A program made the translations under genes and the position numbers. A stretch of 64,000 nt of DNA, taken from assembly GCA_033442325.1 (NCBI GenBank), contig JAWQFM010000027.1:873047-937046 (forward strand), read 5' to 3'. Positions 21,948 through 51,667 of this stretch are shown in pieces (the first letter of the stretch is position 1; each line of letters starts with the position of its first letter). The stretch comes from Salpingoeca rosetta (Eukaryota; Protista; Choanoflagellata). The notes beneath the pieces are model-generated. The model was not told the origin of the DNA. It ran no database searches and worked only from the letters and a program-made list of their open reading frames with translations.

Positions 21948-24900
21948 CTATGCAGCCGTCTGCGCTGCCTGCAAGCAATCATCGTGAATTTCTTCAAACG
22001 TGGGTCGTTCGCGGGGATTGATATCCATGCATGTGCACGTCAAACGAGCGAACCATTCGGGCACCATATCTGTGTTGATAGTCGTGCCAGCAGTTTGATC
22101 AGTGAGAATAAGAATAAGTCAATGCAAGCAGTGTGTTGCTGACTTCATTCAGATCAAGGCAGAACACACACACACACACACGTCCACACGTCCACACGCA
22201 CACACACACACACGCACACACACACACACGCGCGCGCGCGCACACACACACACACACACACGCGCACACACACACACACACGCACACACACACGCACACG
22301 CACACACACACACACGCACACACACACACACATACGCGCACCTTCATCTTCGAAGCGAAGCCGCTTTCCTTCGTGCAGGAGGGTGCTGAGTGTTGCCAGC
22401 ATTGGGCCGTGGAAGTCACTTCCCTTCTCCTGCTCAATCAAGTCGGGCACACGCTGTGTCGCGACCTCCCACATCAGCACGCCAAAGCTGAACACGTCTG
22501 CTTTCGCATTGTACTTGCCACCGATGAGGGCTTCTGGTGCCATGTACAGCGGGGTGCCCACGCCAGCCGTCATCGTCATGCTGGGATTCATAGTTGCCGT
22601 GCCCGCCGCCTGCGAGTACAGCAGCGTGCTTCCTCCAATCGTCCACCTCGTGGTTGCCACAGGATTGACAGAGGCTAAGCACTGGCGGATGGACCCAAAA
22701 TCCGTGATTTTGGCGCGCAGCGTGGTGGACACGAGCACGTTCCCGCTCTTCAAATCGCTGTTGGCATTATTGCATGAGTGTGGAATGGCGGGTGAGCAGA
22801 AGAAGAAAGGCAGTGCCTGCAGGCACACACACACACACACACACACACACACACACACACACACACACACACACACACACACACACACACACACACACAC
22901 ACAAACGCACACAAGCACACACACACAAACGCACACGAAGACACACAGACACCCACCCACCGATGAACTTGGTCGAGGCTGTGGATAAAGGCCATGCCAC
23001 TCGCGACATCGCGCAGTAGCCGCAGCTTCAGGTCCCATACAGTCATTGCGTTTGCCTCGTCATTGTCAGTCACGCTCACCAGAGTCAAGTCCTCGCCCAG
23101 GTCTGCCATCGTCACGTCACCGCCACCTTTCCCCGTGTCTCTCGCTCGCAGGTCCACCAGCACCTCTTCCATGTCCGTCTCCAATAGCTCCTTGAGCGAC
23201 CCCATCGCCACATACTCCAGCACAAGGAAGGGGCTGCCGTTGGGATCTGTGCCCGCGCCAAAGAACCGCACCACGTGCGGGTGCCGTGTACGCTGCAGGA
23301 ACTCCACCTCCTTCTCAAACTCCTGCACCGTGGTCTCGTCAAACATCATCACCCCTTGCTGCAGCACTTTCACCGCCACCATCACTGTGTCCCATTCTGC
23401 CTTGAACACCACGCCAAACGCACCCGCAGCAACACGCTTGATCAGCTTCAACTCATCATACTCAATCTCCCACGCCTTCTTCAGCGCCATCACCTCCTCG
23501 TCTCGTTCTGACAGCAGCCTCTTGTGCAACTTGTCGCTCTTGTGCGAGCGTGCGTATCGGCGATATAGCCAGAGGATCACGGGAACAAGAAGGATTGTGC
23601 CACCGGCAAGGGATCCAACAACGATGGCAGGAATGTTTGCTCCATCTGGCACACACTCGCTGTCGTCGGCATCCCCAGACAGATGGTGTTGTTGAGTGCA
23701 TTTACACCGGAAGCTGTACACAAGCTGAGTGACTTGCACACTGTGATCATTGGCGAGGCGGAGGTCCTGTCGTTCCAGCTCTGCACCACACTCGACCGGT
23801 GACCCTTGCAGTTGGAAAACTGGGGGTGTATCTCGGGAGAGTACAGAGGTGCCACCGGCAGTCTCAAACTGCTGCGATGACAGGGCGACTGGTCCGCCAG
23901 CGACCTGCTCAATTCTTCTGGGAGCGCGCAGCCACGCGTTGTCGGACAAATCCAGCACACGCACTAGCTGGAGACACGTGGCCAAAGCAGCCTCCGCAAC
24001 CCGAGTCTGAAAGTGTGTCTCGGGCAGGTTGCGTGCAAACAGCGCATGGCGGCCCCAGCGAGTACAGAGGGCCGGGCTCGGCGGAAACAAAGTGTTGCTT
24101 ATGTCCAACGCATCGATTGAAGGCACGTCAATTGTCTCCAGCTGCCGGCACCCAGAGACATCGAGCAAGCTCAGCGGGGTGTGAATGCGCACAGATTTCA
24201 GCTCTTTGTTGTTCTGCAGCAGCACAGTGTCGAAGGTGTGGTTTTTGCATTCGTCCAGACGCAGTTCCTCAAAGTCAGTGTTGGACAGCCCAAGCTCGGT
24301 GACAGATTTGCTTAGAAGCGAGCACACGTTCTGAACCTGCAAGGTCTGGTTGTCAGCGCCGGGCCAACCCACATGCAAAATTTCGAGCTGAATCGACAAG
24401 TTCCCGAGGATCTTGAATGCGCGTCGAACGTCAACATTCTCCAATCGCAAGGTGCGCAGATGCAGACTTGTTAAGTTCTTTGCCGCAACAGCTCCCCTGT
24501 CAACGACGAGCTCCGAGTCGACATCGGGTGCTGCATCCAGCTCCAAGACCTCCAGCTTCAGCTGCAGTGCGTCTGTCACGTTGAGCCGTTTGATGCGATG
24601 CTGGTCCAGCCGAAGCTCGGTCAGGTTCGTGAGCTGCGTAAAGTTTGGCAGCTGTGTGAGAGGGTTGTTGCTGAGCCGCAGATGAGCTAATTCTGGGAGG
24701 GGGGTGTCGAAGGTGGCCTGGGTAAGCTCGTTGCCTGCAGCATCAATGGTTTTTAACTGCGCCAGGTTGTTGAACACTCCGTTGAAATGCTTGAGCTTGT
24801 TGTCTTGAAAGAACACTCGCTGAATGTGGGGACACCTGTGAAAGAGGTCTTGGGGCACTTTCTTAAGCTCGTTGCGACTTGAGAAGAAGCCTTCCAGCTT

Positions 24901-50100: not shown

Positions 50101-51667
50101 CACGTGCCAGTGCTCGCAAGGGTATGAAGATCGCGATGGGCGCTGTCACTCGACGGCACCCGACGTTACCGCGGCGGTTTTGGGCACGCTCGCTGGTGTG
50201 TTGGTGCTGCAAGCTGTTTTTCTCCTTGCTTACCGCACGTACACACGACAACGACGATTGCAGGCGGACAACGCCTTGAAGGACCAACTGCTCATGGAAC
50301 GAAATGAGGAGGTGATGGCACTGAAGCGGGCGTGGGAGATTGAGTACGATGAGCTGAGACTGGTTGAGCGTGTGGCTGCAGGTGCTTTTGGTGTTGTGTT
50401 CAAGGCAGAGTGGGACACGGTGACGGTGGCGGTGAAGGTGTTGCAGCAAGGGGTGATGATGTTTGATGAGAGCACGGTGCTTGAGTTTGAGAAGGAGGTG
50501 GAGTTTCTGCAGCGGACACGGCATCCGAATGTGGTGCGGTTCTTTGGCGCGGGCACAGATCCCAACGGCAGCCCGTTCCTGGTGCTGGAGTATGTTGCTC
50601 TGGGGTCACTGAAAGACTTGTTGGGGAAGGATATGAAACAGGTGTTGAAGAACGCGAGGAACGAGAGCGCTGATGGCGGTACAGATGCAAGCGTGATTGC
50701 AGAGGATTTTGGTGAGGAGCTGACGTTGGTGAGCACAGGACGCGACAGGAGCGCTGACACGATAACTGTTTGGGAGTTGAAGCTGCGACTGCTGCGTGAC
50801 GTTGCGGGTGGCATGGCCTTCATCCACAGCCTCGACCAGATGCACCGGTGAGTGGGGTATTTGTGTGTGTGTGTGTGTGTGTGTGTGTGTGTGTGTGTGT
50901 GTGTGTGTGTGTGTGTGTGTGTGTGTGTGTGTGTGTGTGTGTGTGTGTGTGTGTGTGTGCAGCCACGTGCTTCTTGCACATCGCCCATCCGCCTCACCCC
51001 TCTCATCAACACCACCCAAACAGAGACCTCAAGAGCGGCAACGTGCTGGTATCATCGTCGCTTCGCGCCAAGATTACGGATTTCGGATCCATTCGCCAGT
51101 GCTTCACGCGTGACAGGAACCAGCACAAGCAGCGCACCCGCCTCTCCTCCTCCAGCGATGCAGACCCCCAATACACCCAAGAAGCTGGACTGCAGACGAT
51201 GACCAGCATGACGCTGACAGCTGGCGTGGGCACGCCGCTGTACATGGCACCAGAGGCATTGACGGGCGACAAGTACAGCTTTGAAGCCGACATCTTCAGC
51301 TTTGGCGTGCTGATGTGGGAGGTGGCGACGCAGCGTGTGCCCGACTTGATTGAGCAGGAGAAGGGGAGCGAGTATCGTGGCCCGATCCTCGCCACACTCT
51401 TCAACTTGATGGCAGATGGGAAGCGGCTCACGTTTGACGATGACGAACAGGATGGTGAGTTGTGTGTGTGTGTGCGCGTGCGTACGTGCGTGTGTGTGTG
51501 TGTGTGTGATGTGCGTGATGTGCTTGGATTGGTTACTGACGCATCCTATCTCCCCCCACTCGGCAGCCATTCCGGAGTGGTTCCAGTCGCTGACGTACAA
51601 GTGCATGGCGCAAGACCCGCGTGAGCGGCCGTCGTTTGGGGAATTGAAGGACCACCACTTTCCTTAG
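47183..51667 (+). CDS. LRR transmembrane receptor kinase 3; exons 47183-50847, 51024-51454, 51567-51667
   Basis: Signal peptide, LRR array, CQCSQGYEDRDGRC, TM AAVLGTLAGVLVLQAVFLLAY, and a complete kinase. Same two kinase-domain intron positions as copies 1 and 2. Confidence 0.94.

What the first reader, a model, noticed from the sequence alone, without database searches (positions are those of the whole stretch)
21948..51667. Family of three LRR receptor kinases with a shared, apparently unnamed pro-domain ending in a furin-type site
Seen: after the signal peptide all three proteins follow the same order. (i) A Cys-containing amphipathic helix: [13 protein letters not shown] / LCDRVDDTLSQIM / LCREAKAELRQLL. 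(ii) A variable linker, then a second helix ending in Cys: [15 protein letters not shown] / IDLSSIRDMMDVVGC / ALERALTFFC. (iii) A disordered spacer ending in a polybasic RxxR site: RMRRAER / RLQRQRR / RSRSRR. (iv) A conserved Cx9C cap: [11 protein letters not shown] / CTFSSVVDGTC / CTLSSLLALNC. Then an L.L.G...NG.W / SGTW block, canonical LRRs, a conserved atypical LRR block (L..GW.G, D.V.LQ.N, L.VS.C, ARN), CxC...C, a TM helix and a TKL-type kinase (HRDLKSGN, GTP.YMAPE). Established: RxxR and Rx[KR]R are proprotein-convertase sites, and LRR-TM-kinase receptors are best known from plants and oomycetes. Inference: a proteolytically matured receptor system in which a disulfide-stapled helical hairpin acts as an inhibitory cap or released ligand, plausibly for sensing bacteria.
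Basis: partly seen in the sequence, partly recalled or inferred. Interest (0 to 1): 0.85.

Follow-up and report, generated by a model that had tools for sequence, protein, structure and literature searches.

The report
Cleavable pro-piece on choanoflagellate receptor kinases
Three neighbouring receptor-kinase genes of the choanoflagellate Salpingoeca rosetta belong to a family of about 50 receptors that all start with a small, unnamed two-helix module. This module is followed by a strictly conserved Arg-x-Arg-Arg site of the kind cut by furin/kexin proteases, so these receptors are probably made as precursors and cut before use.

Summary
The three genes are intact and hold no assembly gaps. 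My models equal the public S. rosetta proteins XP_004989513 (G1), P0053 (G2) and P0007 (G3), each annotated "TKL protein kinase".

All three read: signal peptide, helix with Cys, helix ending in Cys, disordered low-complexity spacer, R-x-R-R, about 10 residues, Cx9C cap, LRRs, transmembrane helix, TKL kinase.

In 31 aligned paralogues (mean column identity 23%) the four Cys are invariant once one misaligned row is corrected by eye. P4, P2 and P1 Arg are each kept in 30 of 31. Of 46 annotated S. rosetta members, 39 have R-x-[KR]-R within 35 residues of the cap; chance expectation is about 1%.

Homologues in Microstomoeca, Barroeca and Hartaetosiga keep the layout. Pfam, the ESM Atlas and PDB fold searches find no named equivalent. 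The genome encodes kexin/furin-like convertases.

AlphaFold2 gives the pro-piece the same helices, and as confidently, with or without the LRRs. The site lies in a region with pLDDT below 50.

Cleavage itself is untested, and so is any inhibitory or ligand role. One paralogue pair has swapped the whole promoter-plus-pro-region cassette exactly at the pro/mature boundary, which argues for a generic module rather than a receptor-specific one.

Two other first-stage readers of this scan noted the same feature in neighbouring windows of this genome.

The parts
21948..26741 (-). G1: LRR-TM-TKL receptor kinase gene, 4 exons (26741-26607, 26328-22961, 22757-22342, 22069-21948), 1346 aa. It equals XP_004989513.1 / EGD78564.1.
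   Evidence: identical to P0002. Pfam LRR_8 and PK_Tyr_Ser-Thr.
26607..26741 (-). G1 exon 1: start codon and signal-peptide-like hydrophobic segment.
26263..26319 (-). G1 pro-piece helix 1 with invariant Cys C1 (aa 49-67).
26095..26139 (-). G1 pro-piece strand plus helix 2, ending in Cys C2 (aa 109-123).
25951..26094 (-). G1 disordered, hypervariable spacer between C2 and the basic site.
   Evidence: pLDDT below 50. Spacer length 27-119 aa and mean pairwise identity 17% across paralogues.
25939..25950 (-). G1 R-M-R-R (aa 172-175): candidate kexin/furin-type cleavage site.
25873..25905 (-). G1 Cx9C cap (C3...C4, aa 187-197) at the start of the LRR solenoid.
23563..23634 (-). G1 transmembrane helix (aa 944-967).
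27406..32179 (-). G2: paralogous receptor kinase gene, 4 exons (32179-32036, 31881-28544, 28191-27776, 27545-27406), 1345 aa. It equals public protein P0053.
31819..31875 (-). G2 helix 1 with C1 (aa 51-69).
31711..31755 (-). G2 helix 2 ending in C2 (aa 91-105).
31489..31500 (-). G2 R-Q-R-R candidate cleavage site (aa 176-179).
31432..31464 (-). G2 Cx9C cap (aa 188-198).
47183..51667 (+). G3: more divergent paralogue, 3 exons (47183-50847, 51024-51454, 51567-51667), 1398 aa. It equals public protein P0007. Its subfamily carries two extra Cys before helix 1.
47408..47461 (+). G3 helix 1 with C1 (aa 76-93).
47573..47602 (+). G3 helix 2 ending in C2 (aa 131-140).
47792..47803 (+). G3 R-S-R-R candidate cleavage site (aa 204-207).
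47831..47863 (+). G3 Cx9C cap (aa 217-227).

Best explanation
G1, G2 and G3 are type-I LRR receptor Ser/Thr (TKL) kinases of Salpingoeca rosetta that are made as pro-receptors.

After the signal peptide comes an autonomously folding mini-domain of about 75 residues: a long helix starting with Cys, a short strand (VPF), a disordered loop, a short strand (V/I-D-L), and a second helix ending in Cys. The two helices run antiparallel, so the two Cys can staple the hairpin.

A disordered, hypervariable tether of 27-119 residues leads to an exposed R-x-R-R site about 10 residues before the Cx9C cap of the LRR solenoid.

INFERRED: a kexin/furin-like proprotein convertase cuts after R-x-R-R in the late secretory pathway. 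This separates the pro-piece from the LRR-TM-kinase chain.

INFERRED, WEAKER: the pro-piece is a generic, interchangeable module, such as a folding or trafficking aid or a guard against premature signalling. It is probably not a partner tailored to each receptor's ligand-binding surface.
For: SHOWN.
- Gene models are intact and identical to public proteins.
- Each protein has exactly two hydrophobic segments, which fits a signal peptide plus one transmembrane helix.
- In 31 paralogues with 23% mean column identity, C1, C3 and C4 are invariant. C2 is invariant in A2. P4, P2 and P1 Arg are each present in 30 of 31.
- The distance from the site to C3 is 7-12 residues in 26 of 31, while the spacer in front varies from 27 to 119 residues and is only 17% identical between paralogues.
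- 39 of 46 annotated S. rosetta family proteins have R-x-[KR]-R within 35 aa of the cap. The chance rate is 0.2-0.3 motifs per 750-aa ectodomain.
- Of 19 homologues from Microstomoeca, Barroeca and Hartaetosiga or from unlabelled public sequence sources, 8 keep R-x-[KR]-R and 6 more keep a dibasic site.
- AlphaFold2 places the site in a segment with pLDDT around 40. It gives the pro-piece helices at pLDDT 83-90 both with the LRRs and alone, with an internal 23-24/61-62 bridge.
- VIA matches to the pro-piece model are only antiparallel helical hairpins.
- The genome encodes S8 + P-domain convertases. Two kexin-like genes are reported in Monosiga (bioRxiv 10.1101/802215).
- The promoter/pro-region cassette was exchanged between two receptors, with the breakpoint at the cap.
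Against: - No direct evidence of cleavage exists: no proteomic, N-terminal or western data.
- Disulfide connectivity was not measured.
- The motif is less strict outside S. rosetta, where six homologues have only a dibasic site and five have none (three of these are N-terminally truncated).
- R-x-[KR]-R is not depleted elsewhere in the ectodomains: 8 observed against 6.3 expected. There is thus no sign of selection against stray sites.
- The complex prediction gave no verdict.
- G1 expression is low in the RNA runs examined.
Confidence: 0.55

Rival explanations
1. The receptor is cleaved but stays two-chain. After convertase cutting, the pro-piece remains bound to the LRR-TM-kinase chain, either non-covalently or through a disulfide to the cap, as a permanent structural or regulatory subunit. 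This is how the insulin-receptor and MET alpha/beta chains behave, and how the two halves of TLR7 behave after Z-loop processing.
For: - Furin-processed receptors that stay assembled are the common case in animals (proIR/proIGF1R, PMC7563341 listed; TLR7, PMC5591332).
- The conserved residues just after the site and the conserved first irregular repeats could form a docking surface: site-plus-cap identity is 44%, against 37% for the rest.
- Five of 31 pro-pieces have an odd Cys count, and 20 of 31 have a single extra Cys after the cap.
Against: - The pLDDT of the pro-piece does not rise when the LRRs are present.
- 25 of 31 pro-pieces have exactly two Cys, and the hairpin geometry pairs them with each other.
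- No docking evidence was obtained (one search gave no verdict).
Confidence: 0.25
2. The site is not cleaved. The N-terminal hairpin is simply an extra N-terminal domain. The basic cluster is conserved for another reason, for example binding sulfated glycans of the extracellular matrix or a co-receptor.
For: - There are no cleavage data.
- Some homologues in other species lack the full motif.
- Stray R-x-[KR]-R motifs are not avoided in the ectodomain.
Against: - The conservation pattern is exact at P4, P2 and P1, with a free P3, and P1' is small or polar in 29 of 31. This is the convertase signature rather than a general basic patch.
- The site lies in predicted disorder.
- Its spacing to the cap is fixed while the other flank is hypervariable.
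Confidence: 0.25
3. The released pro-piece is itself a signal. It would be a convertase-liberated, disulfide-stapled peptide that acts on the same or neighbouring cells, that is, a pro-hormone fused to a receptor.
For: - The pro-piece is predicted to fold autonomously.
- Its helices and strands are under constraint (32% identity, against 17% for the spacer).
- Convertase sites classically release peptide signals (bioRxiv 10.1101/802215, abstract).
Against: - Pro-pieces are nearly identical among several receptors whose LRRs differ, and they are exchanged as a cassette together with the promoter. They therefore carry little receptor-specific information.
- No stand-alone pro-piece gene was found. 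The only candidate is a 138-aa fragment-like model (P0029).
Confidence: 0.1

Closest known systems
Choanoflagellate LRR receptor kinases (Monosiga brevicollis LRR-RKs; Dievart et al. 2011, PMC3268121; Soanes & Talbot 2010, PMC2939053)
   Same: Signal peptide, LRR ectodomain, one transmembrane helix and a cytoplasmic kinase. These form a lineage-specific clade, independent of the plant LRR-RLKs.
   Different: Those papers report 7 genes in Monosiga and describe domain architecture only. They mention no N-terminal pro-piece or convertase site. S. rosetta has about 50 members. The one Monosiga relative retrieved (P0085) did not match the N-terminal profile, although it has R-D-R-R 13 residues before a Cys.
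Furin-processed animal receptor kinases (insulin receptor/IGF1R, MET/RON)
   Same: A type-I receptor kinase made as a single-chain precursor, with an R-x-[KR]-R site in the ectodomain that is cut in the secretory pathway (PMC7563341, listed).
   Different: In those receptors the N-terminal product is the large ligand-binding chain and stays disulfide-linked. Here the N-terminal product would be a mini-domain of about 75 aa plus its tether, and the ligand-binding LRRs stay on the kinase chain. The kinase is TKL (Ser/Thr-type HRDLKSGN), not a tyrosine kinase.
TLR7/8/9 ectodomain processing (Z-loop; furin-like convertases for human TLR7; PMC5591332)
   Same: An LRR ectodomain of the 'typical' animal type, carrying a disordered insertion that is cut by proteases as a maturation step. 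The best structural matches to the LRR part include TLR13, Toll and TLR3.
   Different: The Z-loop lies in the middle of the solenoid and both halves stay together. Here the site lies before the N-terminal cap. The cytoplasmic domain is a kinase, not a TIR domain.
Choanoflagellate 'Kinase TLRs' (Richter et al. 2018, PMC6040629)
   Same: Choanoflagellate-specific receptors that pair extracellular LRRs directly with an intracellular kinase.
   Different: Kinase TLRs have a TIR domain after the kinase. G1, G2 and G3 end about 30 residues after the kinase, and Pfam reports no TIR.
Plant LRR-RLKs (RLK/Pelle kinases with an LRRNT_2 cap)
   Same: The overall LRR-TM-kinase architecture, and an N-terminal helix followed by a Cys pair before the first repeat.
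   Different: There is no LRRNT_2 match. The LRRs resemble animal-type repeats. The closest solved kinases are CTR1 (Raf-like), Src family and TAK1, not RLK/IRAK.

Membership tests
Choanoflagellate LRR receptor kinases (LRR-RK sensu Dievart 2011) | Extracellular LRRs only, one transmembrane helix, and a cytoplasmic protein kinase domain. | tested here: met
   Pfam gives LRR_8, LRR_4 and PK_Tyr_Ser-Thr. There are two hydrophobic segments, one N-terminal and one at about aa 945-1000.
Choanoflagellate LRR receptor kinases (LRR-RK sensu Dievart 2011) | The kinase domain falls in the Monosiga LRR-RK clade in a phylogeny. | not tested
   No tree was built. One Monosiga protein (MONBRDRAFT_36839) is a kinase-region homologue at E = 2e-28.
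Proprotein-convertase (kexin/furin) substrates | An R-x-[KR]-R motif in a lumenal or extracellular, accessible segment of a secretory-pathway protein. | tested here: met
   The motif is conserved in 30 of 31 paralogues, and P1' is small or polar in 29 of 31. The segment has pLDDT below 50. The signal peptide and topology fit.
Proprotein-convertase (kexin/furin) substrates | A convertase is present in the same organism. | tested here: met
   PF01483 P-domain hits lie at three loci with clear scores, plus a weaker fourth. L050 carries Peptidase_S8 plus P_proprotein.
Proprotein-convertase (kexin/furin) substrates | Cleavage after the P1 Arg is demonstrated. | not testable with these tools
   This needs a western blot, N-terminomics or mass spectrometry.
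Kinase TLR (Richter 2018) | A TIR domain C-terminal to the kinase. | tested here: not met
   The proteins end shortly after kinase subdomain XI, and Pfam reports no TIR hit on the parts scanned.
Plant LRR-RLK (RLK/Pelle) | An LRRNT_2 N-cap and an RLK/Pelle-type kinase. | tested here: not met
   There is no LRRNT_2 hit at E up to 10. The closest solved kinases are CTR1, Src and TAK1. A phylogeny was not done.
Disulfide-linked two-chain receptors (IR/MET type) | An inter-chain disulfide between the N-terminal fragment and the membrane-bound chain. | not testable with these tools
   Only Cys counts are available: 25 of 31 pro-pieces have exactly two Cys.

The most novel reading that the evidence does not exclude
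Convertase cutting is a regulated switch rather than routine maturation, and one of two things follows. Either the liberated, disulfide-stapled hairpin is a diffusible signal encoded on the same gene as a receptor (a pro-hormone/receptor fusion). [quoted passage not shown]
Probability: 0.12. Interest if true: 0.85.

Novelty: new variant of a known kind. Interest (0 to 1): 0.62.

Why it matters
Choanoflagellates change behaviour (rosette formation, mating, feeding) in response to bacterial molecules, but the receptors involved are unknown. This is a family of about 50 clustered LRR receptor kinases with fast-diverging ectodomains, which makes it an obvious candidate set.

A family-wide, strictly conserved convertase-type site in front of the LRRs gives a concrete, cheap experimental handle in S. 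rosetta. It can be tested by tagging both ends, mutating R-x-R-R, or inhibiting convertases.

If the site is cut, proteolytic maturation of receptor kinases would be found outside animals, on a receptor type (LRR-TKL) that animals do not use. That would bear on the view that convertase-dependent cell-surface signalling predates animals. It would also define a new small extracellular domain that has no Pfam family.

Tried and rejected
- Complex prediction of the pro-piece (residues 1-85 of the aligned N-terminus) against the mature N-terminal LRR part (residues 128-469) returned 'no answer' (score 0.00, alignments not used). It counts neither for nor against binding.
- The ESM Atlas feature search with the G1 pro-region gave no usable hit.
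- Foldseek of the pro-piece model against the PDB gave nothing. VIA-align gave only generic helical hairpins with Z up to 4.3.
- Foldseek of the 469-residue model returned only generic LRR ectodomains. It says nothing about the pro-piece.
- Pfam on five N-terminal regions gave only sub-threshold low-complexity matches (RHINO, Phostensin), which I rejected.
- A word-indexed homologue search with the membrane-proximal ectodomain region returned only seven S. rosetta paralogues, so it was uninformative about other species.
- I tested whether stray R-x-[KR]-R motifs are avoided in mature ectodomains. There is no depletion: 8 observed against 6.3 expected.
- RNA reads were too few to confirm the splice junctions of G1. 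Depth over the kinase exons is dominated by cross-mapping paralogues.
- P0030 and P0032 in the profile search are repeat-rich proteins that match only a short segment of the profile many times over. I rejected them as spurious.
- Model coordinates and PAE were not available, so the C1-C2 distance and the contacts between pro-piece and LRRs could not be measured.
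Full report
WHAT IS THERE

The window is contig C27:873047-937046 of a 55.4-Mb genome. The genome is Salpingoeca rosetta ATCC 50818, because the encoded proteins are identical to NCBI entries of that species.

The finding's span holds three receptor genes. I built their exon structures from the sequence.
- G1: minus strand, 4 exons, 1346 aa.
- G2: minus strand, 4 exons, 1345 aa.
- G3: plus strand, 3 exons, 1398 aa.

All introns are GT-AG and rich in (TG)n. No frame has a stop. The three products are identical to public proteins P0002 (XP_004989513.1, 'TKL protein kinase'), P0053 and P0007.

The four assembly gaps flagged by the scan program lie at 34.1-45.7 kb, between G2 (ends 32179) and G3 (starts 47183). 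They touch none of the genes. That interval holds other genes, including a diacylglycerol-kinase-like exon.

ARCHITECTURE

Pfam finds LRR_8/LRR_4 repeats and a kinase domain, and nothing on the first 240 or so residues. Each protein has exactly two hydrophobic segments, an N-terminal signal-like one and one at about residue 945-1000. These are therefore type-I receptors.

The kinase has VAVK, HRDLKSGN (split by an intron), DFG and APE. Its closest solved relatives are CTR1, Src-family kinases and TAK1. This fits the TKL annotation. No TIR domain follows the kinase.

The three proteins are 40-46% identical overall, with near-identical kinases and diverged ectodomains.

THE N-TERMINAL PATTERN IS REAL AND FAMILY-WIDE

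A six-frame search of the genome with the G1 N-terminus gave 51 matches at about 48 loci, many of them on the same contig. I aligned 31 N-termini (A1; A2, extended by 230 residues).

With a mean column identity of 23%:
- C1 (start of helix 1), C3 and C4 (the Cx9C cap) and one Trp are invariant.
- C2 (end of helix 2) is invariant in A2. It is missing in only one row of A1, and that row is a misalignment, because the Cys is present two residues away.
- The basic site reads R at P4 in 30 of 31, R at P2 in 30 of 31 and R at P1 in 30 of 31.
- P3 is free: V in 13, S in 4, Q in 3, with M, E, R, K, H and others filling the rest.
- P1' is N, A, E, S or D in 29 of 31.
- P2'/P3' are often acidic.
- P5/P6 often carry a further Arg or His.

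The site lies 7-12 residues before C3 in 26 of 31. The segment between C2 and the site varies from 27 to 119 residues. It is low-complexity (poly-Q, poly-T, poly-N) and only 17% identical between paralogues, against 32% for the pro-piece and 37% for the LRR part.

Among 46 annotated S. rosetta family proteins aligned to the profile:
- 39 have R-x-[KR]-R within 35 residues of C3;
- 3 more have it within 86 residues;
- 2 have only a dibasic site;
- 2 have none, and one of these is truncated.

By composition the motif is expected 0.2-0.3 times per 750-residue ectodomain, roughly 1% per 35-residue window. This is a selected feature, not chance.

OUTSIDE S. ROSETTA

A profile of A1, scored against 1.84 billion representative proteins, found only 37 proteins. 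All are LRR-TM-kinase receptors except two spurious repeat proteins.

Named sources are S. rosetta, Microstomoeca roanoka, Barroeca monosierra and Hartaetosiga balthica, plus unlabelled proteins from ENA and Logan assemblies. These homologues keep a Cys-bearing helix, a second helix ending in Cys, a basic site and a Cx9C cap. Examples of the basic site are RVRR, RIKR, RIRR and RSKR. Of 19 such proteins, 8 have the full motif, 6 have only RR or KR, and 5 have none (3 of these are N-terminally truncated).

The one Monosiga brevicollis relative retrieved through the kinase region did not match the N-terminal profile. It does show R-D-R-R 13 residues before a Cys. I treat this as a lead only.

IS IT A KNOWN DOMAIN?

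No. Pfam gave nothing. The ESM Atlas gave nothing. Foldseek of the pro-piece model gave nothing. VIA-align gave only generic antiparallel helical hairpins with Z up to 4.3.

In the literature library:
- LRR receptor kinases of Monosiga are described as a lineage-specific clade of seven genes (PMC3268121; PMC2939053).
- Choanoflagellate 'Kinase TLRs' are described (PMC6040629).
- I found no mention of a pro-piece or a convertase site on these receptors.

STRUCTURE PREDICTION

AlphaFold2 on the first 469 aligned residues of G1, using A2, gave mean pLDDT 84.5.
- Helix 1 (residues 2-19) has pLDDT 83-86.
- Helix 2 (residues 64-72) has pLDDT around 84.
- Short strands are predicted at 23-24 and 61-62.
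- Two segments have pLDDT below 50: 29-55 and 83-131. The second contains R-M-R-R at 124-127.
- A regular LRR solenoid starts from the cap at residue 137.

Folding the pro-piece alone (81 residues, A3) gave the same helices and the same 23-24/61-62 bridge, with pLDDT 86-90. The pro-piece is therefore predicted to fold on its own, and its confidence does not depend on the LRRs.

In an antiparallel hairpin closed by that bridge, the N-terminus of helix 1 (C1) and the residues just after helix 2 (C2) come together. This fits a C1-C2 staple. In addition, 25 of 31 pro-pieces contain exactly two Cys. I could not measure distances, because coordinates are not exposed.

The LRR part resembles animal-type ectodomains such as LRRTM2, TLR13, Toll, LGR5 and Lingo-1.

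THE PROTEASE

The genome has Proprotein-convertase P-domain hits at three loci with clear scores, plus a weaker fourth. One ORF carries Peptidase_S8 plus P_proprotein. Kexin-like convertases are reported for Monosiga (bioRxiv 10.1101/802215).

A CLUE TO FUNCTION

Paralogues L011 and L025 lie 173 kb apart on contig C4. They are 96-100% identical in DNA over about 1.8 kb, which covers the upstream region, the signal-peptide exon, the intron, the pro-piece, the spacer and RVRR. Identity then drops to 53-70% from about nt 1995-2017 of L011, within 10-15 codons after the site and at the first Cys of the cap.

In the five closest pairs, the spacer is 71-92% identical, although it is normally the fastest-evolving part. 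The mature LRR part of the same pairs is only 57-74% identical.

The 5' cassette is thus exchanged or homogenised among receptors whose LRRs differ, and the boundary of the exchanged unit is the pro/mature boundary. This supports the view that the region before the site is a separate module. It argues against a pro-piece co-adapted to its own receptor's binding surface.

EXPRESSION

In three stranded RNA runs of the species, G1 has low coverage: 0.3-4.6x over the unique ectodomain in one run and near zero in two. All reads are on the expected strand. Reads over the kinase exons mostly come from paralogues. No splice joint had enough reads to be listed.

HOW IT MOST LIKELY WORKS

Shown:
- the conserved order of elements;
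- the constraint on the four Cys and on R-x-R-R;
- the predicted disorder around the site;
- the autonomy of the predicted hairpin;
- the presence of convertases;
- the modular exchange of the 5' cassette.

Inferred:
- A kexin/furin-like convertase cuts after R-x-R-R in the late secretory pathway. I give cleavage as such a probability of about 0.65.
- The pro-piece is a generic module. It may act as a folding or trafficking aid, or as a guard against premature signalling.

Whether the pro-piece is released, retained or active as a signal is open. The complex test gave no verdict.

The closest functional analogues are the furin-processed animal receptor kinases (IR/IGF1R, MET) and the protease-matured LRR ectodomains of TLR7/8/9 (PMC5591332). 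This family differs from both. The cut would remove a small N-terminal module in front of the LRR cap, and the receptor is an LRR-TKL kinase confined to choanoflagellates.

VERDICT

- Novelty: a new variant of a known kind, namely a convertase-site pro-receptor on a lineage-specific LRR kinase family with an unnamed pro-domain.
- Two other first-stage notes of this scan reported the same feature on neighbouring windows of this genome. The loci at those places (L002, L006) are in my alignments and show it.

Noticed in passing
L011 (G000:C4:372193-376086) vs L025 (G000:C4:545294-548989): These two paralogous receptor genes share a cassette that is 96-100% identical over about 1.8 kb. It covers the upstream region, the signal-peptide exon, the intron, the pro-piece, the spacer and RVRR. 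Identity then falls abruptly to 53-70% at the first Cys of the cap. This points to a recombination or gene-conversion breakpoint exactly at the pro/mature boundary. Milder versions are seen in L009/L017, L023/L027 and L009/L014.
   Followed up: partly
G000 contig C27 (the window's contig), e.g. 214786, 332900, 347370, 577055, 598311, 648769, 676239, 693116, 782633, 790652, 898547, 904121, 937350, 989722, 1012373: At least 16 of the roughly 48 family loci lie on this one 1.06-Mb contig. The family is strongly clustered, as in tandemly expanding receptor arrays.
   Followed up: partly
window 38227-38889 (-): An ORF between G2 and G3 matches the diacylglycerol kinase accessory domain (PF00609, E = 1e-12). 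It belongs to an unrelated multi-exon gene in the gap-rich interval 32.2-47.2 kb.
   Followed up: no
window 47300-47410 (+), G3 aa 40-78, and paralogues L043, P0016, P0020, P0037: The G3 subfamily has two further conserved Cys in front of helix 1 (pattern C...GC-x6/7-C). This gives its pro-piece four Cys instead of two, still an even number.
   Followed up: partly
P0013 (locus L036, G000:C13:725042) and P0019 (S. rosetta): These are variant members. P0013 ends just after the transmembrane helix, making it a kinase-less receptor-like protein. The public model of P0019 lacks C2, the spacer and the basic site, so helix 2 runs almost directly into the cap. This may be a natural deletion or a mis-predicted intron.
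   Followed up: no
window 22156-22343, 22812-22965, 27560-27775, 28260-28540, 50860-50960, 51460-51530: The introns of all three genes sit at the same positions in the kinase domain (HR|DLKSGN, and before subdomain XI). They consist largely of (TG)n/(GC)n microsatellites, which translate as long Cys-Val runs in naive ORF calls.
   Followed up: no
P0085 (Monosiga brevicollis MONBRDRAFT_36839): This is the only Monosiga relative retrieved through the kinase region. It has a short Cys-rich N-terminus and R-D-R-R-E-P-L 13 residues before a Cys, yet it does not match the N-terminal profile. It may be a reduced version of the same site.
   Followed up: no
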